From NCBI RefSeq assembly GCF_006345805.1, contig NC_043019.1:4091360-4155359 (forward strand): DNA of 64,000 nt. Reading direction: 5' to 3'. The notes under the pieces are model-generated. The model was given only the letters and a program-made list of their open reading frames with translations. It made no database searches and was not told the DNA's origin. This stretch comes from Octopus sinensis (Eukaryota). The position numbers and the translations under genes are program-made. Shown piece by piece: positions 28,936 to 56,300 of the stretch. Position 1 is the first letter of the stretch. Each line of letters opens with the position of its first letter.

Positions 28936-29479
28936 AGAGTTTTTCAAGAGTACATATACTGTTTACCAGAGAACATACTGCATAACCATTCCAGTTTACC
29001 AGTTCCACTCGAACCGTCTAACACATACCAGCAGAGAAATCGGGTGCTAGATGATGATGATGATGATGATGATGTGTGTGTGTGCATGTGCGTGTGTGTG
29101 TGAGTGTCCATGCGTGTGTGCATGCATATGTGTTGTCTTTGTTGCGTAGCCTGCTGCTACGTTGACTGAGATCTCTAATGGAAGACATTCCGACCACGAC
29201 CTGTTCAACTTCTTACATTCATCTACAACAAAATTCCATAAAGTGTCCTTCCTTTTTCAAGACAATAAAATGCATTCAGCTGGAGCTTCACTATTTCTAG
29301 CAGGTCAGCCAACCACTTAGAGACACAGCCTTGTCTGTCTGTGTGTTTATTTGTATAATTGTATATGTAGACGTGTGTGTGTGTGTGCGTGTATGTGTGT
29401 GTGCATCGGAGAAGATTGTATGTGTTTACTTGTTTCAGAGTATACTAGTGTAAGCTATATGTGTGAGCATGTCTGTGTA

Positions 29480-30295
29480 TATTGATACAGATTGATTGTA
29501 TGTATGTATGTATGTATGTGTATTTATGTATGTATATGTATGTATGTATGTATGTATGTATATGTTGCATGTATGTATGTATGATTGTATGTATGTATGT
29601 ATGTATGTATGTATGTGTGTATGTAGTATGTATGATGTATGTATGTATGTATGTATGTATGTATGTATGGTTGTATGGTTGTATGTATGATATATGTATG
29701 TGTATGTATGTATGTGTGTTTGTATGTATGTATGCATGTATGCATGTATGTATGTATGTATGCATGCATGCATGTATGTATGTATGTATGTATGTGTGTT
29801 TGTATGTATGTATGTATGTATGCATGTATGTATGTATGTATGCATGCATGTATGTATGTATGTATGTGTGTTTGTATGTATGTATGTATGTATGTATGTA
29901 TGCATGTATGTTGTATGTATGCATGTATGTATGTAAATATGTATGTATGCATGCATGTATGTATGTATGTATTTATGTATGTATGTAGTATGTATGTATG
30001 TATGCATGTATGATGTATGTATGTATGTGTGTATGTAGTATGTATGTATGTATGTATGTATGTATGCATGATGCATGTATGTATGTATGTATGTATGTAA
30101 GTATGTATGTATGCATGCATGTATGTATGTATGTATATATGTATGTATGTATGCATGTATGTATGTATGTCAGTATGTATGTATGTATACATGCATGTAT
30201 GTATGTATGTAGTATGTATGTATGTATGTATGCATGCATGCATGCATGTATGTATGTATGTATGTAGTGTGCATGTATGTATGTATGTATGTATG

Positions 30296-30327
<32 letters not shown>

Positions 30328-30340
30328 TGTATGTATGCAA
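29480..30340. repeat. (GTAT)n microsatellite
   Basis: Direct reading. Confidence 0.97.
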
Positions 30341-30978
30341 AGGTACATGAAGCCCAGTTACAACTACAGCCGGCTATTACCAGTAAAGGTCTTAGTTGCC
30401 AATTTTGTACAAGACATTGTAGATCTTTAGCTGGGCTAAAAAGTCACATTCGATTACAACACCAGTAACAGTTAAGCTTCGTGCAATGTCCATACTCGAT
30501 GGCCATTGCACGAAGGGGCAGCCATAAATAAATAAATGTATGTATGCGTTTATGTATGTGCATTTGTCTGAGCATGTGTCTGGCATGTGTAGTTGTGGAA
30601 GATGGAGGCCGTTCTCAAAACGCTGAACGTTATGAAGGAGGTAACAGAGGACCAAGACATGTGGTGCATTCCTGTACTTGAGAAGACTCACCTACCACAA
30701 CAGAATTGAGATCCTAAAACGAAGGTGCCATGTAAAAAGCGTTGGTGTGGGTGCTGGTGTCACGTAAAAAGCGCCAAGTACACTCTGTAATGTGGTCGGC
30801 ATTAGGAAGAGCATCCAGCCATAGAAACCAATAGAAAACAGACAGTGGCACCTGGTGTGGCCCCCGGCCTTTACCAGTTCCTATCAAGCCATCCGGCTCC
30901 TGTCAAAATGGAAAACGGACCGTAAATGTTGTGGCTGCTGCTGTTGTTGTGTATGGGTGAATTGGAGTAAGGTGTAGA

Positions 30979-31412: not shown

Positions 31413-32681
31413 ACGTAAAGACATTGGTGCAAATATCTTGTGCTTCATCTCTAGGAGGAGATAACTCCTGAAAAAGGAACGTAACTCGAGGTACACTCAA
31501 CTCCCAAGCATTTGACAAAAATGTGTACCAAATTAACAACTGAGGTTGATATCGAAACAAGTGCTACAGCATGACCACAGTGGAGTGACAAAATCCAGTC
31601 ATGTGACATAGACTAATCACGGGGCTCCTATGAATTTTTCGAGGGTAGCAAGGATGAACTGAATTATATTTCCCTCAGTACATAACTGGTACTTGCTCTA
31701 TTCAGCCTGAAGTGATGAACAACTAAGTAAACTCTAGCAGGATTTTGATACCCAACATAAAAAGGGCCATTCAAAGTACAATGGCCATCAAACTGCGACA
31801 GCAGCAGCTGCTGCCCTTGCCGCTCGCCCCAACAATGCTCCTTGCCACTAAGTCACGTGCCTTCAAAAAACACTATATACATATGGACTTACATGTGCAT
31901 ACATGCCCAAACATGGGGTTATAGGTTCAGGCATCTGCACCCCTATTCCAGCCCCACCAAAGAACTCCAACACATGTATCAGCCCTACACACGTACCAAA
32001 CCCTTAACACCCTACACATATTTCTACCCAACAGATTCGCATTCTTATAGCCAAACATAAGAATTTAGAGACCAGGGGACGTAACTCTTAGTAAATTCCA
32101 CACAATTATTTTCCGTGACTTCATTTCGTTCCCGCTCTCTCCTTTTTACAACAACCACAAACGAAATGTGGCATTTTGTCACCTCCTGCCACAAGGAACA
32201 GTCGAATATTTATTCTATGCCTTCCATCTCTGACTCGGAAACACATGTGTTTTAGATAACCATCCAGCTATCCAATATCTGGTTATCTGACAATAATTTT
32301 ACTTTAAACAGAATACTTTTTCTCGAGTATTTATTTACTATTTTTCGTTTTGGGATTTGGTTTGCAGGAGTCTTTATATGAGTTCGTGTGTTGAAGCATA
32401 TTCTATTGTGTCTGGGGAGAGTCATTTTCTTTTTGTGCCTTATTAAGTAACACACTCACCGGTAAAATTTCCACGGTTTTCTTATTTTTATTGTCCTAAA
32501 ATTGTCGTTGCGTCTTGCAACCTTTTTAATAGTTTTATTTATTATTCTTTAACAAGAACAGCTTCGAAGTCTCGGATTGCTTATCCTTCATCAGACTGTG
32601 ATATGTTTGAGTTCATCTATTAAACTGCCCACAGCTATAATGTAGTAATCATACCAAAAATGTAAAATCATAAACCATTCT

Positions 32682-32999
32682 TTATTCTACAATCTTTAAT
32701 CGTTGTTGAATATCGATTTCATATAAATTAGATCGCCGTCCGCAAAGTTTATGAATATAATTCTCTTGAGAGCAATTAAAATAAAGCATGAAACTTTTGC
32801 AATGATGACAAAGAACAGGGATTGAGTCCATGAGTCCAGCCCGTTCTTCCTTTTGGTTGAGTTTATCTACCAGGAGTATTTTCAAGGACTGGTACTTGCC
32901 AATAGCATTGGAATATCGTAGCTTCTGTTTCTCATTTACACTTCGTTTATGTAGTTGTCTTATTTCGTTCAAAAGATTCTCCAAATGAAACAGCTGGTT
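32682..32999 (-). CDS. STAND-TPR gene A, distal alternative terminal exon (10b)
   Basis: TTTCTAG|AAC acceptor, phase 0, 105 codons plus TAA; NQLFHLENLL...LCHHCKSFMLYFNCSQENYIHKLC...LKIVE*. Confidence 0.82.
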   Translation of the reverse strand, partial: NQLFHLENLLNEIRQLHKRSVNEKQKLRYSNAIGKYQSLKILLVDKLNQKEERAGLMDSIPVLCHHCKSFMLYFNCSQENYIHKLCGRRSNLYEIDIQQRLKIVE

Positions 33000-33025
33000 C
33001 TAGAAATAAAAAGAAAGTGAAATTA

Positions 33026-33072
<47 letters not shown>

Positions 33073-33236
33073 CTTCATCATCATCATTTAACGTCCGTTT
33101 CCCATGCTGGCATGGGTTGGACGGTTTGACTGAGGACTGGCAACCCTGTAGGATGCACCTGGCTCCAATCTGATCTGGTAAAGTTTCTACAGCAGGATGA
33201 CATTCCTAATGCTAACCACTCTGAGAGTGTAATTCT

Positions 33237-33557
33237 TTATTCTACAATCTTTAATCGTTGTTGAATGTCGATTTCATATAAATTAGATCGCAGTCCGCAA
33301 AGTTTATGAATATAATTCTCTTGAGAACAATTCAAATACTGCCTGAAGGTCTTGCAATGATTACAAAGAACAGGGATTGAGTCTATGAGGAGTCCAGCCC
33401 GTTCTTCATTTTGGTTGAGTTTATCTACCAGGAGTATTTTCAAGGAGTGGTACTTAGCAATAGCATCGGCATATCGTTGCTTCTGTTTCTCATTTACTTT
33501 TTGTTTCAATAGTTGTCTTAGATGGTTCAAAATATTCTTCATATGAATCAGCTGGTT
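33237..33557 (-). CDS. STAND-TPR gene A, proximal terminal exon (10a)
   Basis: TTTCTAG|AAC acceptor, phase 0, 106 codons plus TAA; NQLIHMKNIL...LCNHCKTFRQYLNCSQENYIHKLC...LKIVE*. Confidence 0.85.
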   Translation of the reverse strand, partial: NQLIHMKNILNHLRQLLKQKVNEKQKQRYADAIAKYHSLKILLVDKLNQNEERAGLLIDSIPVLCNHCKTFRQYLNCSQENYIHKLCGLRSNLYEIDIQQRLKIVE

Positions 33558-33904
33558 CTAGAAATAAAAATGAAGTGAAATTAAGCCACATATGTATATA
33601 TATATATGAGGATAATATCGATCCCATCAAGTGGCCAACATGGGAATAAATGCCATAGAAAGGTAAAAATTATTTAAAACTATAAATTAGGGTATCTGAG
33701 AGATGGCACCATGCTGAAATAGCAGTCCAAACCGTGGCTCAAAAGCCACAGCGCTAGGAGAGAAGACAGAGAGACAAAATTATCTAGAAAAAAAAGATTT
33801 TTCTGGATAATTGAAGATCCTGGATTTCTGACTTTGCATGAGAAGCTCTGCCTTCTTCAGTTGAATATACCAGATCGGCAAATAAATACATACATATATA
33901 CTCT

Positions 33905-34314
33905 TTACTCTTTCACTCTTTTACTTGTTTCAGTCATTTGACTGCGGCCATGCTGGAGCACCGCCTTTAGTCGAGCAAATCTACCCCGGGACTTATTCTT
34001 TGTAAGCCCAGTACTTATTCTATCGGTCTCTTTTGCCGAACCGCTAAGTGACGGGGACGTAAACACACCAGCATCGGTTGTCAAACAATGCTAGGGGGAC
34101 AAACACAGACACACAAACATATACATACACACTTATATATATATACATATATACGACAGGCTTCTTTCAGTTTCCGTCTACCAAATCCACTCACAAGGCA
34201 TTGGTCGGCCCGGGACTATAGCAAAAGACACTTGCCTAAGATGCCACGCAGTGGGACTGAATCTGGAACTATGTGGTTGGTTAGCAAGCTACTTACCACA
34301 CAGCCACTCCTGCG

Positions 34315-34318
<4 letters not shown>
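33905..34318 (-). mobile_element. SINE family C, full length
   Basis: Reverse complement of the 14038 type. Confidence 0.88.
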
Positions 34319-34390
<72 letters not shown>

Positions 34391-34603
34391 ATATATATAT
34401 TTATAAATTTATAAGATTAGCTCGTATACGAGTGGGTATATATTTGTTAAAAATATATGCATTCTGGCCACCTAAAAGGTTATATAAAACCCAAACAATT
34501 CACAAGGTCCGCCAGAACTGTCCGAGCGGACACCGACCAAAAGTCATCACAGTTGCTCAAGGTAAAATATAAAATGAATTCCTCGCTTTTTCAAGAACGT
34601 CAA

Positions 34604-35034
34604 TTTTTTATATTGAATGCATATCACCACTATGAACTATTTTTTATATTGAATGCATATCACCACTATGAACTATTTTTTATATTGAATGCATATCACC
34701 ACTATGAACTATTTTTTATATTGAATGCATATCACCACTATGAACTATTTTTTATATTGAATGCATATCACCACTATGAACTATTTTTTATATTGAATGC
34801 ATATCACCACTATGAACTATTTTTTATATTGAATGCATATCACCACTATGAACTATTTTTATATTGAATGCATATCACCACTATGAACTATTTTTTATAT
34901 TGAATGCATATCACCACTATGAACTATTTTTTATATTGAATGCATATCACCACTATGAACTATTTTTTATATTGAATGCATATCACCACTATGAACTATT
35001 TTTTATATTGAATGCATATCACCACTATGAACTA
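34604..35034. repeat. 36-bp tandem array, 12 copies
   Basis: TTTTTTATATTGAATGCATATCACCACTATGAACTA x12, identical except one unit with 5 T. Confidence 0.97.
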
Positions 35035-35307
35035 CTACATCATACTCTTTAAACATATAGCATGAACTCACTTCACTATATATGAACTTTTGATGTCTGA
35101 CTCTATTGTATATTATATATGAATTTTTTTATATTTGATAGCATGAACTATCTTTTTTATATATAATTTTTTTTGATAAGGTTCATCATTTCAAGAACCC
35201 AAACATGTTAAATAAATAATGTATATATAAAAATTAAAAATTTGTCTAATATAGCAGCACTTTCGAACTTCATTTTTTACAAATATATAATATATATATA
35301 TATATAT

Positions 35308-35345
<38 letters not shown>

Positions 35346-35402
35346 TATATATATATATATATATATATACTATATATGTATATATATATATGTATATAAT
35401 AT

Positions 35403-35448
<46 letters not shown>

Positions 35449-35667
35449 CAGAACATACGTTATACTTACATATACGAACGCTCATACATACCTATATGTG
35501 CACGTATGTACAAGACCAGTTTAAGTTGCCTGCCAAACAGCTCCATGCGCGATATGGTCAAAATAAACACCGCAGTAAATACAATGCTGGCCACTTGATA
35601 AGATCGATATTTAAATATCGATATTATCCTTATTTATAGATTTATAAATTTCGGTATATATCTATGC

Positions 35668-35784
<117 letters not shown>

Positions 35785-35864
35785 ATTATATATATTATTA
35801 TTATATATATTATTATTTATATTATTGTTTGTTATCAATACTGAAGAACATTTAAATATATTCG

Positions 35865-36262
35865 TGGCACTCCGTCGGTTACGACGAGGAGGGTTCCAGC
35901 TGATCCAATCAACGGAACAGCTTGCTCGTGAAATTAATGTGTAAGTGGCTGAGTACTCCACAGACACATGTACCCATAACATAGTTCTCGGGAAGATTCA
36001 GCGTGACACAGTGTGTGACAACGTTGCCCCTTTGAAATACAGGTACAACAGAAACAGGAGAAAACATTGAGAGAAAGTTGTGAGGAAAGAGTACACCAGG
36101 GTTCGCCACCACCCACTGCCGGAGCCTAGTAGTGCTTTAGGTGTTTTCGCGCAATAAACAAACACTCACAACATCTAGTCTGGGAATCGAAACCGCGATC
36201 CTATGACCACAACCCTACGACCGCGAGTCCACCACCCTAAGCACTGGGCCATTGCGCCTCTA
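35865..36262 (-). mobile_element. SINE family B
   Basis: GTGGCACTCCGTCGGTTACGACG tail and TGGGAATCGAAACCGCGATCC head in reverse orientation. Confidence 0.85.
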
Positions 36263-36342
36263 CACAAAAATTGTGACGTCGTCATTATTTGTGTAAGTAT
36301 ATGATCAATACTCATTACGTAAGCACAAGCACAACCTACATG

Positions 36343-36389
<47 letters not shown>

Positions 36390-36479
36390 ATATATATTTA
36401 TACGGTAATAAGAAAATGAAGGGGACCAAGAGATGGTGTTCAGCAACTTTTAGTCATTATATTATATCTATTTTATTCT

Positions 36480-36875
36480 TTTTTCTTTTATTCTTTTACT
36501 TGTTTCAGTCATTTGACTGCGGCCATGCTGGAGCACAGCCTTTGGTCGAGCAAATCGACCCCGGGACTTATTCTTTGTAAGCCCAGTACTTATTCTATCG
36601 GTCTCTTTTTGCCGAACCGCTAAGTGACGGGGACGTAAACACACCAGCATCGGTTGTCAAGCAATGCTAGGGGGACAAACACAGACACACAAACACACAC
36701 AAACACATATATACGACATGTTTCTTTCAGTTTCCGTCTACCAAATCCACTCACAAGGCATTGGTCGACCCGGGGCTATAGTAGAAGACACTTGCCCAAG
36801 ATGCCACGCAGTGGGACTGAATTTGGAACCATGTGGTTGGTTAGCAAGCTACTTACCACACAGCCACTCCTGCGC
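36480..36875 (-). mobile_element. SINE family C
   Basis: Same body as 33905. Confidence 0.88.
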
Positions 36876-37212
36876 CTATGTATTTAAAAAAATTATAACA
36901 AAATACATACATGTATAACAAATTATTCTGTATATATATAAAAATACCAGTAATTATTAAAATATATAACATAGAACATAATAAGTAGAATAGTTTCTTA
37001 CAGCTGTTTCAGTCATGAGGTCACAGTACCCCGCTTTCCTTCCATCCCTCTAGTGAATTGAAGTATTTGGTAGATAAAATTAAGGTACTTCGTCAGAGAA
37101 TTTAGAAAGTTCATAAGGTTAAGTCTAAATATAAATACATTCATATATACAAACTTTTACATGTACATATATATACATATACATATGGTGTGTTGTATAT
37201 ATAAATATATAT

Positions 37213-37245
<33 letters not shown>

Positions 37246-37334
37246 TGTGTGTGTGTGTATGTATACGTATATGTATATTTATGTCTATGTATACGTATAT
37301 GTATATATGTATATGTAAAAGTGTGTATAAGGTA

Positions 37335-38900
37335 CACCCAAGTACCTTAATTTTATCTACCAAATACTTAAAAGAAGAAATAATTGTACCAACATTATTA
37401 GTAGAAGAATAACCAAATCCAAAATTATCACTAGAAAAAAATGTTATTATATTTTTTATTATCTCTAACGAATACTTCAATTATAATAAAATCTCTTTAA
37501 TAATGTTTGTTTTAACTTGAGCTCCATAGGGAATAATTAACCAAAATTTGGTTTATTAAATATTATTATATTTTTTTTTATATTATTAAATTATTATTAT
37601 CATTAAATGATTTAAATTTTATTTTATTTTTTAGTCTATTATTATATTATTTTTTATATTATTAAATTTATTATTATCATTAAATGATTTAAATTTTATT
37701 TTATTTTTTAGTCTATTATTATATTTATTTTTTATCTTATTAAATTTATTATTATCATTAAATGATTTAAATTTTATTTTATTTTTTAGTCTATTATTAT
37801 ATTTATTTTTTATATTATTAAATTTATATTTATCATTAAATGATTTAAATTTTATTTTATTTTTTAGTCTATTATTATTTATTTTTGATTTATTAAATTT
37901 ATTATTATCATTAAATGATTAAATTTTATTTTATTTTTTAGTCTATTATTATATTTATTGTTTATTATTAAATTTATTATTATCATTAAATGATTAAATT
38001 TTATTTTTTTTTAGTCTATTATTATTTATTTTTTATATTATTAAATTTATTATTATCATTAAATGATTTAAATTTTATTTTATTTTTTAGTCTATTATTA
38101 TATTTATTTTTTATATAACAAATTTATTATTATCATTAAATGATTAAATTTTATTTTATTTTTTAGTCTTCTATTATTATATTTATTTTTTATATTATTA
38201 AATTTATTATTATCATTAAATGATTTAAATTTTATTTTATTTTTTAGTCTATTATTATATTATGTTTTGTATTATCAATACATATTATTAATACCATAAT
38301 TACCTAAATAAAACGTATCGTAATTCCTAATGTTAGGCTTATTATAAAAAATTAGAATCATTTATATTATAATCATATTTAGAATTATTAAAGAATTTAA
38401 TATTATTATTTATCCCGCCTCTGGCAGGGCTTCATTATAATAAGTGCGTGTTTTTGGAAAATCTCAAAATTAGAAGAAAGCAACGATATTCTTTTACCTA
38501 TATCAGCTGTCAATGATTTCTTAATAGAGGGTGGATGATTAATTAGCATTAATATATCTAAGGTTTTCCTTAATTTTATGGAATGGTTGGTTTTTACCTG
38601 TTATTAAATTAAAATTAGCATCTAAATAATTAACATTATAGTTCTCATTATATATAGTAATACTCAATCTATGTCTTTTAAAAAAAACTATATAGTTTCT
38701 TCTTATATAATTCTAGTGTTGTATTGGTGCAATTCTTAGTTATTAATAAAATGTCATCCCTATATAGACTACCCTCCAACTTTAATTTTTCTAATTGAAA
38801 TTCCGATAATAAATAAATACCTACTAAATCAGTTGGCTGTGCAGAATCGGGTGCGCCCATAGCTATATCAAAAAAGTCTCTAGTATCCTTCGTAGCCCAG
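37335..38900 (-). mobile_element. Decayed AT-rich Penelope-like element (RT, thumb, linker)
   Basis: MGAPDSAQ...LYRDDILL; VNYLDANFNLITG; NHPPSI; PYGAQVKTNI; GYSSTNNVGTIISS match PLE RT/thumb motifs. Confidence 0.82.
37555..38265. repeat. ~78-bp AT-rich tandem repeat, about 9 copies, inside the Penelope ORF
   Basis: AGTCT landmarks spaced 73-81 bp; the 78-bp unit reads RLKNKIKFKSFNDNNKFNKIKNKYNN on the minus strand. Confidence 0.9.
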
Positions 38901-40072
38901 TTTATTATTGTATCTAATCAACATAGCCGTTATAACAACATTAACTTCATCATAAGTCATTTCTACCTTATTCATTACATAATTTAAACGTAAAACCTCG
39001 AACTTAGCGTTTATATAAAATGTAGCGTGAAAATATGGTGTAAATAGAATTTATAGTCATAATTAAATTACTTACATAATAAGTTTAGCTAATTTTGTAT
39101 ATATATATAAACCCTATTTTATGTTACTAATTGCTGTAGTTATAATTTGTAGTAGTAAAATGTGTATAAATTAGCACGAGATTATATTGTCTATATTACA
39201 TAATTAGAATAAATTGAAAATTAGATGTTTATAAAATAAATTGATTAATGAAAATAGATTAAATTATAGAATTTTAGCTTAATTTACGTTTATTATATTA
39301 TGTATTTTACGTATTTAGTTTTTAAAATATTTAGACTTTACAAATTTTCCAGTTAATGATATATTAAAATTAATTTTTTTCCTTGTTCTTACAGCTAAAA
39401 TACATTTGTAATTTTAATAGCTTAAATACATATTTCTATCTATTTCTTCTATAAATTCTATTACGCCATATTTTCACGCGATATATTTTATATCGACGCT
39501 AAGTTCGACGGTTTACGTTTAAATTTTTAGTTCACGAAAATCCTTCGACAAGATAAGTTACATTTTTATTTTAAGAAATATTATTACATGCTTTTCGATT
39601 ATTTATAGTTAATACACGTATTATTTTATATATTTATTTGATAATTAATATAAGTTAAGATAAGTACATTTATTCTATTATTATTTTTTATTATTTATTA
39701 TCTTAGACCTGATGAGTGATTATATTTTTAAATAGAATTAATTTTAGTTCCATTTAATTTTAAATCGAATTGATTTTATTATTATTATTATCAATTTGTA
39801 AATATAGCTATGATGGATTCTCTCATCGTGAATGACAACTGAGGGTGCAGTGAACTAAAGCAGTAATCATGTTCTATGGACGGGAATGCGTCTCTTGAGG
39901 CCTGCTGGTGCCTTGCAAACCTTTCAGCAAAAGGAACAAAAACCACTGCAGAAATCTCTCCCTCCATCTTTCACTCAACCCATATATCCATTAATCAATC
40001 CATCAATCTATCAATCATCAATGAATCCCGCAATTAATCAACAATTACAACATATGTGATAATTAACCATAC

Positions 40073-40337
40073 CTGAGGATTTTCCAAATTGAGGTAAACC
40101 AGGTGTTCTAAAGCCATTGAGAAACCTTCAACCGCTGATACGCTGCTCAACAAATGGTCGGTGTTACCATTCAATATGTCCTGGAAACAACTCGTGGCAT
40201 TATCGAATTCCTCTTTCAGCAGATAGCAGTGCGCAATTGCGTGAATGACATCCATCTTTCCGGTGTAGTTTGGGTTTATCTGGTTGTAGATCTCCAAAGC
40301 CTCATGAAAAAATGTCAGGCTGTAGGAGATTTCATGC
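40073..40337 (-). CDS. STAND-TPR gene A, exon 9 (TPR)
   Basis: CAG|G acceptor, CAG|GTATGG donor, phases 2-0; HEISYSLTFFHEALEIY...IHAIAHCYLLKEEFDNATSCFQDIL. Confidence 0.88.
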
Positions 40338-41461: not shown

Positions 41462-42033
41462 TATTGGGTTGTCTAGAAAGTTCTTGCCGATTTTTAAAGG
41501 AAAGAAAAAGGTCAATAAATACTTGCCATTACATTTTTAATCAACCAAATATGAACCATTTTGTTGCACAATGCATCTCCATCTTTCCTTTAACTTGAAA
41601 ATACCTTCTTCCCAGAATTGAGGTGGTTTCATGGTATCTTCCCAGAATTGAGGTGGTTTCAAGGTATCTTTTTACGTCATCCAAGAAATTGAAATTTTTA
41701 CTATTCGGCAGAGACCTGAATAACTGGAAATCCGAAGGAGCAATATCCGGTGAATATGGAGGGTGGAGTAACACATCCCAGCCAAACTGCAGCAATTTTT
41801 GTCTGGTTCCCAAAGCATCAAGTGCCGAAAATGAACTTTCTTATCTTCCATTTTAAAGAGTTACAGAATTAACACAGTTATAGGAACATAACCTTCTTCC
41901 AGGAAAAGATAGCTTAAACTGTGCTCTAAATGGCGGTGTAGTAAAATCCTGTTTTATGGAATCAACCATGTTCTAAAATAAGTCGAAATGTAAGCTACTA
42001 TAAATCGGCACGAACTTTCCAGACAACCCAATA
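41462..42033 (-). mobile_element. Internally deleted mariner element
   Basis: ~32-bp TIRs TATTGGGTTGTCT(A/G)GAAAGTTC(T/G)TGCCGATTT; GWDVLLHPPYSPDIAPSDF transposase motif. Confidence 0.9.
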
Positions 42034-42087: not shown

Positions 42088-42199
42088 ATTCTCAGATACA
42101 CAAGACCAATGTAATGCAATACCAAGGAGGTGTTTATGTGTAGCCAGCTATGCTTCTTTTGGATATTCTTGGCACTGAACAGGAGTTGAAGTGCTTTAT
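42088..42199 (-). CDS. STAND-TPR gene A, exon 8 (TPR)
   Basis: TTCTTCTTCCAG acceptor, AT|GTAAGT donor, phases 1-2; NKALQLLFSAKNIQKKHSWLHINTSLVLHYIGLVYLRM. Confidence 0.88.
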
Positions 42200-42663: not shown

Positions 42664-42807
42664 TGTGTTTGCCAAAGTTTCGGGATAATAACTTTGCTAC
42701 ATTACAGTATGCTATCACAGATATCTTGGGATTTACAGTAACAATTTTCAATCTTTCACTAAGTGCAGCATTATAAAATTCAAAAGCTTTCTCATATTGA
42801 AAACCAT
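42664..42807 (-). CDS. STAND-TPR gene A, exon 7 (TPR)
   Basis: TTTCAACAG acceptor, A|GTAAGT donor, phases 1-1; GFQYEKAFEFYNAALSERLK...IAYCNVAKLLSRNFGKH. Confidence 0.88.
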
Positions 42808-45194: not shown

Positions 45195-45308
45195 TCCTTT
45201 CGTAATTAACACCCATTGTATTCAGCATTGTAGATAAAAGAGGAATAGTCATGTCTGACATTTTCTCTAGGTTTTCTGTCAATAATTTCTCACATTTATC
45301 ATAATAAC
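45195..45308 (-). CDS. STAND-TPR gene A, exon 6 (TPR)
   Basis: (CTT)n TTTTTTACAG acceptor, A|GTAAGT donor, phases 1-1; GYYDKCEKLLTENLEK...LSTMLNTMGVNYER. Confidence 0.88.
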
Positions 45309-46831: not shown

Positions 46832-46941
46832 CAACAAATGAGAGGTTGTAGGCCAGGGTAGAGGCACATCTGATCTTCGCATCCTGCACCATCTGTGGGC
46901 TCGCATCATTAACGGTCATGTTGTAACCTGTTTCTGCAAAA
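46832..46941 (-). CDS. STAND-TPR gene A, exon 5 (TPR)
   Basis: TTCCTCAG|T acceptor, G|GTAATA donor, phases 2-1; NFAETGYNM...DAKIRCASTLAYNLSFVG. Confidence 0.8.
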
Positions 46942-48790: not shown

Positions 48791-48938
48791 TTCAAGGCTT
48801 CCACATAATTGCCCCGCATATAGGCATTGTAAGCCATGCTATTGTACAGCAGCATCTGTCGGTACTGGATGTTTCTCGATTTCATTACATCCAAAGCCTT
48901 CTTGTAGTGCTCCATGGCTTCTTTGTATCCTCCATAAC
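48791..48938 (-). CDS. STAND-TPR gene A, exon 4 (TPR)
   Basis: TTTTCCACAG acceptor, AA|GTATGT donor, phases 1-2; GYGGYKEAMEHYKKALDV...LLYNSMAYNAYMRGNYVEAL. Confidence 0.88.
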
Positions 48939-50870: not shown

Positions 50871-51027
50871 CTGGTAAATCTGTCAATGATACACCATATG
50901 CTATATTCATAAACGCTTGTTCTTCTTCATTACCAAATAACAGGGAGTTTTGTAGACAGGCTTGGAAAAACTGTCTTGAATCTCTAGGGTGACATAGCAT
51001 CAGTATATTTGAGGCTTTTAATGTTAT
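50871..51027 (-). CDS. STAND-TPR gene A, exon 3
   Basis: TTTTAG|ATA acceptor, G|GTATGA donor, phases 0-1; ITLKASNIL...FGNEEEQAFMNIAYGVSLTDLP. Confidence 0.88.
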
Positions 51028-53366: not shown

Positions 53367-53700
53367 TTACATCTCATCCAAACTGACCCTCTCCCTAATT
53401 AGTTGGGCTATGATCTTCTCCGTGACCTTCATTACCTGATCCAACAGCTTGATACCTCTGTAATTATTTGTATCTAAGGCGTCACCTATACCTTTGTAGC
53501 AGTTGACTATTATGCTGCTACACCAGTCATTCGATATGACTCCTTCGTGTATCACCTGGTTATCTATACGGGTGACCAGGCTAGATCCGACACTGCCAGA
53601 TATTTTGAGCATCTCTGCAGTGATTCCCGATGAGCCGGGGGCTTTCCCTGTCTTCATACTTTTAATAGCTTTATCTACTGTCAACTCGGATAGCTGCTTT
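53367..53700 (-). mobile_element. RTE-clade LINE RT N-terminal fragment
   Basis: AIKSMKTGKAPG..GITAEMLK...W..SII..YKG.GD...NNYRGIKLL. Confidence 0.9.
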
Positions 53701-53913
53701 ATCTATTATTAAGATTTGTATTTAAAAATTATTGAAATAATTTGTGTATTTTCGAAGTATAAACAATTTCTTACTGATATATTTTAACAACAGCAAACTC
53801 GTGTATGGACCTCTATGGGCCATATGGTCCTCAACTGAAAACCAATGGACGATATAACACAGGTTCAACAAAAATGTGACACATGAAAGACTGACTTGGA
53901 AAAAATATCTTAC

Positions 53914-54939
53914 CTCATAATAAACTCCATATGTCCTACCATCTGAGGGTGCTTCAATCCCTTTCTTCAAGATAAATGAAATATTTTCCCAGTTATTCTT
54001 CATTATTCCAAGTGCTTCATATATGAGGCCTTTATCATAAATATCTTGAGCCTTCATCAAACTTTTCCCGATAATGTTTGTATATTTGAGCTTTACCAAA
54101 TCATTGCTGTGTACATTGTCAATCTGTTGCATAGAAAGTACACGTACTAATTCTTGTACTTGGAAATTCTGTAATTCTAAATCTGAACTGATCAAACCTT
54201 GTTCAACAAGCGGCATCAGAACACGTATCATTGAAGCTGGTTGACTAGAAGAACCAGTCATTTCAACAGCTTCCTCAATACCAAATCTTCCAGGAAAATA
54301 TGAAAGCACTTTGATAGCATCTTGCTGTTCGTGAGAGAGTTGAGAAAAGTACTTGTCCATTTCTTGCTTAATATTACGTCTGTTAATTGTACATTCGTCC
54401 AGCCAGTCATTGAGCTTGGTTTCATCACAAATCATTTTGTAGATATCATTAAAAGAGAAATTATGATGAAACTGGGAGATTTTTTCTGCAAAGTAAATAA
54501 GAAGTCCTGGCAAGCCACAGGCATATCTGATGATGTTGTGTATTTGTTCTTTGTTCTCATCATCCGTCTCAATGTCTGAACAGCGACCGAAAAGAAGCTG
54601 GGCATCTCCAATGGACAATGGACTCACTTTACACTTTCCAAACCTGATTCCATCAAACTGAAATGGTTCTCCACCACTTAATATGAGAATGATTTTTAGA
54701 TTTGGGTGCAGTGGAAAGTCATTGTCGCAAAGCTCCTGGAAACCTGGAAGGAAGCTTTCTTGAATGTTCTGGAAATCATCAAAAATACAAATTTTCCATT
54801 TCGTGTTGGTGATAGTGGAACAATTGGTGAATGTATTGTACATGTTGGAAATATCAGACCAACTGCTATTATTAGAAATATGGATGTGTTTTATGTGGAG
54901 TCTTTCGGGGTTGATTTCATCCTTCAATTCTTGACAGAC
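53914..54939 (-). CDS. STAND-TPR gene A, exon 2 (Walker B, GLP motif, winged helix)
   Basis: 1026 bp, phase 0-0; VCQELKDE...ICIFDDFQN...ACGLPGLL...FQVQELVR...GVYYE|gtaag. Confidence 0.93.
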
Positions 54940-56120: not shown

Positions 56121-56300
56121 AGTTTTCACAAGACTTGTTTTGCCAACATAAGGCAGTCCATAAACTTGTATTATTTGAGTATCTTCATCCTTGATCAAGA
56201 TCTTCAGTTTTTCCCTCTCATCATGTCGTCCAACAAAGTGTCTGCCATTATTGCCTTGCTGTCTCATGTAATTGGGGGGTAATCGATATGGTGTTGCCAT
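56121..56300 (-). CDS. STAND-TPR gene A, first coding exon (Walker A)
   Basis: FVGRHDERE...GLPYVGKTSLVKT|gtaag; in-frame TAA four codons upstream of the ATG. Confidence 0.9.

What the first reader, a model, noticed from the sequence alone, without database searches (positions are those of the whole stretch)
32682..33557. Tandemly duplicated last exon: two intact alternative C-termini with mostly amino-acid-changing differences
Seen: exons 10a (33557-33237) and 10b (32999-32682) share the same TTTCTAG|AACCAGCTG acceptor, the same phase and the same final 17 residues. They differ at about 22 residues plus one clean 3-bp indel, and neither has a stop or frameshift. A hand codon count gave only 3 purely synonymous differences. 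Changes cluster in the first ~37 residues and between the CxxC and the next Cys. Inference: mutually exclusive terminal exons under diversifying selection, giving one receptor two interchangeable C-terminal modules, such as specificity or decoy/partner-binding variants.
Basis: partly seen in the sequence, partly recalled or inferred. Interest (0 to 1): 0.85.

Follow-up and report, generated by a model that had tools for sequence, protein, structure and literature searches.

The report
Two alternative last exons, octopus gene
An octopus NLR-like (ATPase plus TPR repeat) gene really does end in two intact, tandem copies of its last exon, but public annotation already models both as isoforms, and their differences look like ordinary neutral-level family variation, not diversifying selection.

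Summary
Exons 10a (33557-33237, minus strand) and 10b (32999-32682) are intact. They share acceptor, phase and the last 17 residues, and differ at 22 residues, one codon indel and 3 synonymous codons.

The window is Octopus sinensis chromosome CM016881.1. The gene is LOC115223560, a cephalopod-specific P-loop STAND ATPase with TPR repeats. RefSeq already lists both endings: isoform X1 (XP_029650057.1) uses 10a and X2 (XP_036368273.1) uses 10b. An independent O. vulgaris assembly has the same tandem pair, both intact, so it is not an assembly artefact.

Diversifying selection is not supported. About 80% of sites in this AT-rich exon are nonsynonymous, so pN/pS is 1.05 (Fisher p = 1). The family-wide ratio for this exon is about 0.76.

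10a and 10b are not sister copies (AU test p = 0.024). 10b and its flanks match the last exon of paralogues. 10a is a roughly 380-bp cassette. Of 35 differing columns, 19 show both states among paralogues.

The most likely origin is a microhomology (GAAT) rearrangement between array members that placed two family-type last exons in tandem. I could not test transcript use of either exon. It is an ordinary feature of modest interest.

The parts
56121..56300 (-). Coding exon 1 of LOC115223560 (ATG at 56300; holds the P-loop GLPYVGKTS)
   Evidence: Exact GT-AG model that reproduces P0020; tblastn
53914..54939 (-). Coding exon 2 (NTPase/STAND core, 342 codons)
   Evidence: Paralogue omega about 0.34
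50871..51027 (-). Coding exon 3
48791..48938 (-). Coding exon 4 (TPR)
46832..46941 (-). Coding exon 5 (TPR)
45195..45308 (-). Coding exon 6 (TPR)
42664..42807 (-). Coding exon 7 (TPR)
42088..42199 (-). Coding exon 8 (TPR)
40073..40337 (-). Coding exon 9 (TPR). It ends in phase 0 at ...ENPQ|GTATGG and is the single donor that must choose between 10a and 10b
   Evidence: Paralogue omega about 0.51
33558..40072 (-). Intron 9 (6.5 kb, rich in repeats). Only its first ~76 nt and last ~50 nt are alignable with paralogue introns
33596..33607 (-). (TA)6 run at the 5' edge of the 10a cassette
33237..33557 (-). Exon 10a: 106 codons + TAA. It gives the C-terminus of RefSeq isoform X1 (XP_029650057.1)
33236..33241 (-). 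AATAAA overlapping the 10a stop codon. It is the only canonical AATAAA between the 10a stop and the 10b acceptor
33070..33231 (-). 3' part of a dispersed SINE-like repeat forming the spacer. It begins right after TAAAGAAT at an internal point of the element (paralogues read ...CATGAAT|TACACTC), giving a GAAT microhomology at the junction
33030..33069 (-). (AT)20 microsatellite between the repeat and the 10b acceptor region. The same arrangement occurs in paralogues and in O. bimaculoides
32682..32999 (-). Exon 10b: 105 codons + TAA. It gives the C-terminus of RefSeq isoform X2 (XP_036368273.1)
32681..32686 (-). AATAAA overlapping the 10b stop codon. It is followed by the U/GU-rich family 3' flank; further hexamers lie at 32543-32538 and 32492-32487
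31837..32681 (-). 3' flank of 10b, collinear at about 91% with the 3' flanks of the paralogue last exons (LOC115227430, LOC118767588) and of O. bimaculoides LOC106871103

Best explanation
These are two alternative last exons of Octopus sinensis LOC115223560. The gene is one member of a cephalopod-specific tandem array of STAND P-loop ATPase + TPR (NLR-like) genes.

Exon 9 ends in phase 0. Its donor can pair with either of two nearly identical acceptors 558 bp apart. Each target exon carries its own stop codon and a stop-overlapping AATAAA, so a transcript encodes either the 858-aa protein (10a) or the 857-aa protein (10b).

The swapped part is the last TPR-like helical hairpin plus a small CxxC-containing helical cap. 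The ATPase and the rest of the TPR array stay the same.

The pair did not arise as a young local duplicate that then diverged under positive selection. 10b, with its upstream SINE-(AT)n and about 850 bp of 3' flank, is the standard last-exon block shared with paralogues. 10a is a roughly 380-bp cassette with no flanking homology, and it is cut off 5 nt after its stop at a GAAT microhomology.

The most economical origin is one microhomology-mediated deletion, or an unequal exchange, between two neighbouring array members. Such an event would leave the downstream gene's last exon directly behind the upstream gene's own last exon.

The 22 residue differences are mostly pre-existing family variation, evolving at omega about 0.8-1.

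Shown: anatomy, conservation in a second species, the non-sister relationship, omega about 1, and the RefSeq isoform models. Inferred: that both are spliced in vivo, the order of events, and any functional difference between the two endings.
For: - Both ORFs are intact and share acceptor and phase.
- P0020 (XP_029650057.1, X1) contains 10a exactly and P0001 (XP_036368273.1, X2) contains 10b exactly. They are otherwise identical, and the RefSeq CDS span runs from 56300 to 32682.
- The O. vulgaris locus is collinear at 99.1% with both copies intact.
- In the ML tree 10b groups with LOC115227430 and the LOC118767588 second copy (UFboot 93), and then with an O. bimaculoides exon (85). 10a sits alone on a long branch.
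- The AU test rejects a 10a+10b clade (p = 0.024, delta lnL 15.8).
- Of 35 differing columns, 19 show both states among paralogues, 10 are unique to 10a and 6 are unique to 10b.
- Flank analysis: SINE-(AT)n-acceptor upstream of 10b is shared with LOC115227430, the LOC118767588 second copy and O. bimaculoides LOC106871103. The 3' flank is collinear with paralogues. Homology around 10a is limited to 33610-33232. The junction reads TAAAGAAT|TACACTC against CATGAAT|TACACTC in paralogues. There is no degraded SINE upstream of 10a.
- pN/pS is 1.05 with Fisher p = 1. Family-wide omega is 0.34 for exon 2, 0.51 for exon 9 and 0.76 for exon 10.
- The AlphaFold model places exon 10 as helices 751-769 and 775-800, which continue the TPR solenoid, plus helices 818-827 and 831-839 after the CxxC.
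Against: - No transcript evidence was reachable. A search with exon 9 + 10a found no transcript-derived fragments. Gnomon isoforms can rest on protein alignments or on cross-mapped reads from paralogues. The first 38 nt of 10b are identical to the LOC118767588 second copy.
- Neither exon shows measurable purifying selection between O. sinensis and O. vulgaris: 2 differences in each exon against 14 in 1363 flanking nt.
- An intact ORF is weak evidence of function. The chance of no stop after 10-32 random substitutions is 0.54-0.17.
- Gene conversion among paralogues could mimic the non-sister topology, so a true local tandem duplication followed by conversion and an upstream deletion is not excluded.
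- No tandem pair was seen in the O. bimaculoides loci examined, so its age beyond the sinensis/vulgaris ancestor is unknown.
Confidence: 0.65

Rival explanations
1. One reading: a local tandem duplication whose two copies are kept as interchangeable C-terminal modules and driven apart by diversifying selection, for example as specificity or decoy variants.
For: - Both ORFs are intact in two species.
- Differences concentrate in two patches that map to helices of the terminal hairpin and the helix after the CxxC.
- Omega in these patches is nominally above 1 (1.19 for the pair, 1.08 family-wide).
- Comparisons involving 10a have higher omega (0.62-1.44) than those of 10b with paralogue exons (0.49-0.84).
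Against: - Whole-exon pN/pS is 1.05 with p = 1.0. The patch value of 1.19 has p = 0.78.
- On the 10a-specific branch, about 8 nonsynonymous and 2 synonymous changes match the neutral 80:20 expectation.
- Synonymous differences cluster in the same patches.
- 10a and 10b are not sisters, and most differing states pre-exist in paralogues.
Confidence: 0.1
2. Only one copy is functional. The other is a still-open relic, either 10b left behind by a deleted downstream paralogue or 10a as a drifting inserted cassette. In this case the second RefSeq isoform is an annotation product with little or no biological use.
For: - Omega is about 1, and there is no excess conservation of either exon over the flanks between the two species.
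- ORF survival by chance is quite likely (0.17-0.54).
- 10a has lost the family 3' UTR and its U/GU-rich downstream element.
- Frameshifted or stop-containing last-exon copies exist elsewhere in the family (L002 242-557 and L007).
- No transcript fragments were found.
Against: - Both acceptors, with their branch-point-like TTAAT and polypyrimidine tracts, are intact and nearly identical.
- The one indel is in frame.
- RefSeq models both.
- With two equivalent acceptors 558 nt apart, some use of each is the default expectation from what is known of 3' splice-site competition. This is my inference.
Confidence: 0.23
3. Assembly artefact: two alleles or two paralogue ends wrongly stitched in tandem.
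For: The gene lies in a repeat-rich region with microsatellites on both sides of the copies.
Against: The identical arrangement, including the spacer, appears in an independent assembly of a second species (OX597836.1), with 18 differences in 2002 bp.
Confidence: 0.02

Closest known systems
Alternative (mutually exclusive) exons that arise from tandem exon duplication, including duplicated terminal exons such as Drosophila pipe (PMC9013439; also PMC9741552, PMC8373072)
   Same: Adjacent homologous exons of the same phase and near-identical length, each with its own acceptor. Only one can end up in the coding sequence, and the result is isoforms that differ in one homologous segment. The pipe gene shows that this also happens with terminal exons.
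   Different: Here the two exons are probably not products of one local duplication. They look like last exons of two different array members brought together. Expression of both is unverified. Well-studied cases are ancient and strongly constrained, whereas this pair has omega about 1.
Drosophila PGRP-LC, an immune receptor with alternative 3' variable regions (as cited in PMC9013439)
   Same: A receptor-type gene in which alternative 3' exon sets give different C-terminal modules on a common N-terminal part.
   Different: PGRP-LC swaps whole ligand-binding PGRP domains, and competing RNA structures regulate the choice. Here only a terminal helical hairpin and cap are swapped. I found no docking/selector complementarity between the start of intron 9 and the regions upstream of 10a or 10b (z = -0.8 and +1.3).
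STAND NTPases with TPR sensor domains (MalT-like or NLR-like; solved example PDB 6mfv)
   Same: An N-terminal P-loop NTPase followed by a long TPR solenoid. The genes lie in a tandem array with a conserved NTPase exon and a more variable C-terminal half.
   Different: There is no recognisable N-terminal effector domain. The NTPase matches Pfam NB-ARC, ATPase_2 and AAA_16 only below their thresholds. The last-exon module has no relatives outside cephalopods. Function is unknown.

Membership tests
Tandem homologous alternative exons (alternative last exons) | Adjacent exons that are clearly homologous | tested here: met
   89% identity over 376 bp, E = 8e-143; 78% amino-acid identity
Tandem homologous alternative exons (alternative last exons) | Same phase and length compatible with substitution | tested here: met
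   Both start in phase 0 after exon 9 and are 106 and 105 codons long
Tandem homologous alternative exons (alternative last exons) | Each copy has its own acceptor, stop codon and poly(A) signal | tested here: met
   Identical TTTCTAG acceptors with pyrimidine tracts, and AATAAA overlapping each TAA. Whether the signals work was not tested
Tandem homologous alternative exons (alternative last exons) | Transcripts contain one or the other copy | not testable with these tools
   Only the RefSeq Gnomon models X1 and X2 are available. No transcript-derived fragments are in the protein collection
Tandem homologous alternative exons (alternative last exons) | Arrangement conserved in other species | tested here: met
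   Present and intact in O. vulgaris. Not seen in the three O. bimaculoides loci examined, none of which is a certain orthologue
Tandem homologous alternative exons (alternative last exons) | The copies derive from each other by local duplication | tested here: not met
   10b groups with paralogue exons, and a 10a+10b clade is rejected (AU p = 0.024). The flanks differ. Caveat: gene conversion could blur this
Sequence under diversifying (positive) selection | dN/dS significantly above 1 | tested here: not met
   NG86 1.04-1.11, ML 1.01, Fisher p = 1.0; variable patches 1.19 with p = 0.78
STAND P-loop NTPase + TPR (NLR-like) | Walker A (GxxxxGK[ST]) and Walker B (hhhhDD) motifs | tested here: met
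   GLPYVGKTS and KICIFDDF are visible in P0020. The model has a strand-helix alternation at residues 43-146
STAND P-loop NTPase + TPR (NLR-like) | NTPase domain passes a curated family threshold | tested here: not met
   ATPase_2 23.8 bits (cutoff 33.2), AAA_16 21.5 (32.6), NB-ARC 18.4 (23.5), nSTAND6 14.7 (27.7)
STAND P-loop NTPase + TPR (NLR-like) | C-terminal TPR solenoid | tested here: met
   TPR_12 54.8 bits (cutoff 30.1). All-helical hairpins from residue 340 to 800. Foldseek hits to LGN, OGT and the STAND-TPR structure 6mfv, E about 1e-6

The most novel reading that the evidence does not exclude
One octopus NLR-like gene switches in a regulated way between the two old variant types of the family's C-terminal cap. 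10a carries the 'IH..NILNHL / CNxCKTFRQY' type and 10b the 'FHLENLLNEI / CHxCKSF..YF' type. Elements of both types also occur in O. bimaculoides. This would be a PGRP-LC-like way to widen partner or ligand range. In addition, last-exon cassettes would be shuffled among array members by rearrangement and gene conversion as a means of diversification.
Probability: 0.12. Interest if true: 0.55.

Novelty: new member of a known kind. Interest (0 to 1): 0.22.

Why it matters
If both endings are used, this is a small natural example of how rearrangement inside a tandem array of receptor-like genes can create an alternative C-terminus at once, without slow divergence after duplication. It would add a cephalopod case to the short list of duplicated terminal exons.

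In practice the result is mainly a caution. In AT-rich coding sequence about 80% of random changes alter the amino acid, so "mostly amino-acid-changing differences" is not a sign of positive selection. The pair is also already in RefSeq as isoforms X1 and X2.

Tried and rejected
1. Pfam scan of the two 105/106-aa modules gave only sub-threshold noise: DUF1722, SAM_KSR1, DUF6382.
2. A full HMMER scan of 1.84 billion representatives with 10a found only cephalopod family members. Two bacterial PAS-repeat proteins also hit, and I regard them as spurious compositional matches.
3. A search for transcript-derived fragments spanning exon 9 to exon 10 found only two O. bimaculoides genome models.
4. 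Literature searches for the LOC identifiers, and for an octopus STAND/TPR expansion, found nothing specific.
5. Test for docking/selector RNA pairing between the start of intron 9 and the regions upstream of 10a and 10b: no better than shuffles.
6. Test for a degraded SINE upstream of 10a, which a simple tandem duplication predicts: no similarity beyond chance.
7. The idea that paralogues share the close tandem pair was rejected. LOC115223561 and LOC115227430 have one last exon each. LOC118767588 has a second exon 9 + exon 10 set about 20 kb downstream, which is a segmental duplicate and not a tandem exon.
8. Assembly artefact was rejected using O. vulgaris.
9. A four-cysteine zinc site is an unlikely reading of the module. 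Only the CxxC is kept in Argonauta and in a more distant cephalopod homologue from a Logan assembly; the later cysteines are not.

Full report
**What is there**

On the minus strand, 33557-33237 (10a) and 32999-32682 (10b) each read as one open frame, of 106 and 105 codons, ending in TAA. A blastn of the two regions shows one duplicated unit of about 376 bp at 89% identity (E = 8e-143). It begins in a (TA)n run, includes about 50 nt of intron with the identical acceptor TTTCTAG|AACCAGCTG, and ends 5 nt after the stop (TAAAGAAT).

The codon comparison gives 22 amino-acid-changing codons, 3 purely synonymous codons, one in-frame 3-bp indel and 32 substituted nucleotides. The last 17 residues are identical.

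**Which gene**

Stop-free segments and a protein search identify the host gene as Octopus sinensis LOC115223560.

- A 10-exon model with canonical GT-AG sites reproduces XP_029650057.1 exactly.
- The window is CM016881.1:4,091,360-4,155,359 of GCA_006345805.1.
- The protein starts almost directly with a P-loop (GLPYVGKTS) and a Walker B-like ICIFDDF. An all-helical TPR solenoid follows.
- Pfam gives TPR_12 above threshold. ATPase_2, AAA_16, NB-ARC and nSTAND6 score only below threshold.
- An AlphaFold model (mean pLDDT 72.9) matches TPR proteins and the solved STAND-TPR protein 6mfv.
- Relatives were found only in cephalopods: Octopus, Argonauta, a cuttlefish and one transcript assembly.
- The gene sits in an array with paralogues. 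LOC115223659 begins 10.5 kb downstream in the same orientation.

**Already annotated**

The 90%-identity cluster of the best hit contains both RefSeq isoforms. X1 (XP_029650057.1, 858 aa) ends with 10a exactly, and X2 (XP_036368273.1, 857 aa) ends with 10b exactly. They are otherwise identical. The RefSeq CDS span runs from the ATG at 56300 to the 10b stop at 32682. The two alternative C-termini are therefore already in public annotation as computed models. I found no paper that mentions them.

**Real, and shared with a second species**

The orthologous O. vulgaris locus (OX597836.1) aligns collinearly over 2 kb with 18 differences, and both exons are intact. There are 2 differences in 10a (both amino-acid changing), 2 in 10b (one of each kind), none in the spacer and 14 in 1363 flanking bases. 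This excludes an assembly artefact. It is too little divergence to show constraint on either exon.

**Selection**

The exon is AT-rich, with 251.3 nonsynonymous and 63.7 synonymous sites. The observed 25.8 nonsynonymous and 6.2 synonymous differences give pN 0.102 and pS 0.098, a ratio of 1.05 (Fisher p = 1.0). Maximum-likelihood omega is 1.01.

- In the two variable patches (codons 1-37 and 66-75) the ratio is 1.19 (p = 0.78). Elsewhere it is 0.42.
- Synonymous differences are also denser in the patches (0.166 against 0.053). That suggests tracts with different histories rather than selection on the protein, although the synonymous counts are small.
- Among paralogues, mean omega is 0.34 for the NTPase exon, 0.51 for exon 9 and 0.76 for exon 10, with individual exon 10 pairs up to 1.44. 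A value near 1 is therefore normal for this exon in this family.
- Changes unique to 10a are about 8 nonsynonymous to 2 synonymous, which is the neutral 80:20 expectation.
- An open frame is weak evidence of function. Random substitution leaves no stop in 54% (10 changes) to 17% (32 changes) of trials.

**Origin**

Last exons from paralogues and from O. bimaculoides were collected.

- 10b is 95.3% identical to the last exon of LOC115227430 and 94.0% identical to the second LOC118767588 copy, but only 89.9% identical to 10a. 10a is about 90-91% identical to all of them.
- In the ML tree 10b groups with those paralogue exons (UFboot 93) and then with an O. bimaculoides exon (85). 10a is alone on a long branch.
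- Forcing 10a and 10b together costs 15.8 lnL units and is rejected (AU p = 0.024).
- Of 35 differing alignment columns, 19 have both states among paralogues, 10 are unique to 10a and 6 are unique to 10b, including the indel.
- By region, the second patch of 10a is closest to LOC115223561 and that of 10b to LOC115227430. Both tails are alike. The exon family is mosaic.

The flanks point the same way.

- The block "SINE-like repeat, (AT)n, acceptor, exon, 3' flank" around 10b is shared with LOC115227430, the second LOC118767588 copy and O. bimaculoides LOC106871103. Collinearity continues about 850 bp past 10b.
- Around 10a, homology stops about 50 nt upstream and 5 nt after the stop.
- The sequence after 10a enters the repeat at an internal point. 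It reads TAAAGAAT|TACACTC, where paralogues read CATGAAT|TACACTC, so the junction has a 4-nt GAAT microhomology.
- A plain tandem duplication would leave the repeat upstream of 10a as well. No trace of it is there.
- One microhomology-mediated deletion, or an unequal exchange, between two head-to-tail array members explains the junction, the different upstream contexts and the non-sister relationship in a single step.
- A local duplication followed by an upstream deletion and gene conversion remains possible.

**How it would work**

Exon 9 offers one donor. The two acceptor regions are nearly identical and lie 558 nt apart, so both are available within the usual time window of splicing. Some use of each is the default expectation (my inference).

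- 10a keeps the stop-overlapping AATAAA but has lost the family's U/GU-rich downstream sequence.
- There is no other canonical AATAAA before 10b. Several follow 10b.
- Transcripts spliced to 10a may therefore often run on and end after 10b. They would still encode the 10a protein.
- In the model, exon 10 forms two long helices (751-769 and 775-800) that continue the TPR solenoid. These are followed by a loop, the CxxC at 817-820 and short helices at 818-827 and 831-839.
- The variable patches fall on the first hairpin and on the helix after the CxxC.
- Only the CxxC is conserved in distant homologues, so a four-cysteine metal site is unlikely.
- I found no RNA pairing that could act as a selector.

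**What could not be settled**

I could not reach RNA evidence. A search designed to catch transcript fragments across the exon 9 to exon 10 junction returned none. Gnomon isoforms may rest on protein alignments, and short reads from paralogues could cross-map. The first 38 nt of 10b equal those of one paralogue copy, although exon 9 of this gene differs from the paralogues 7 nt before the junction. I therefore give about 0.55 to real use of both exons in vivo.

**Comparison with what is known**

Homologous tandem exons used alternatively are a well-described class. Duplicated terminal exons are known (Drosophila pipe), and an immune receptor with alternative 3' modules is known (PGRP-LC) (PMC9013439; PMC9741552 and PMC8373072). 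This case fits that class in anatomy. It differs in its probable origin from two array members and in the lack of measurable constraint.

**Verdict**

It is a new member of a known kind and of low to modest interest.

Noticed in passing
window 22177-17572 (-): This is the start of a second family member, LOC115223659. Exon 1 matches at 100% and exon 2 at 98.8%. Exon 3 matches as two pieces in different frames, so it looks disrupted. No exons 4-10 were found in the remaining 17 kb. The RefSeq models are short (565 and 601 aa), and one model spans more than 62 kb across LOC118767588 on the opposite strand.
   Followed up: partly
window 40072-39997 (-), start of intron 9: The first ~76 nt of intron 9 are conserved at about 85% among paralogues and in O. 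bimaculoides. Reading through the exon 9 donor gives ...ENPQVWLIITYVVIVD*. An O. bimaculoides RefSeq model (LOC106871096 X1, P0016) ends with this same read-through peptide, and no exon 10 lies within 10 kb downstream there. This could be a truncated isoform lacking the exon 10 module, or a conserved splicing element.
   Followed up: partly
exon 2 (54939-53914), exon 9 (40337-40073), exon 10 (33557-32682) compared with loci L002-L007: Synonymous divergence among paralogues is very uneven along the gene: about 0.05-0.10 in exon 2, 0.03-0.19 in exon 10, but 0.2-0.6 in exon 9. This suggests gene conversion that homogenises the NTPase exon and the last exon but not the TPR exon between them.
   Followed up: partly
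L002 26512-32313 and 48031-52155 (LOC118767588, O. sinensis): This paralogue's annotated span holds two exon 9 + exon 10 sets about 21 kb apart. RefSeq isoform X2 differs from X1 at only two residues, which match the second copy's tail. X2 looks like a chimera of the two last exons and is possibly an annotation artefact. A frameshifted last-exon copy also lies at L002 242-557.
   Followed up: partly
window 53370-53702 (-), 41544-41840 (-), 34370-33915 and 36884-36483: The introns are full of mobile-element debris: a reverse-transcriptase-like ORF just after exon 2, a mariner/Tc1-like transposase fragment (…HPPYSPDIAPSDFQLF…) in intron 8, and two copies of a ~450-bp SINE-like element in intron 9.
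   Followed up: no
window 29435-30430: About 1 kb of imperfect short tandem repeat produces long artificial ORFs on both strands (HTYIHTYI… and MYVCMYVC…). It is not a gene.
   Followed up: no
L007 15705-16022 (O. bimaculoides LOC106870044): This last exon has an in-frame stop 6 codons before the family's usual end (…EVDFQ*QLKIVE). Small changes in C-terminal length are therefore tolerated, or this copy is decaying.
   Followed up: no
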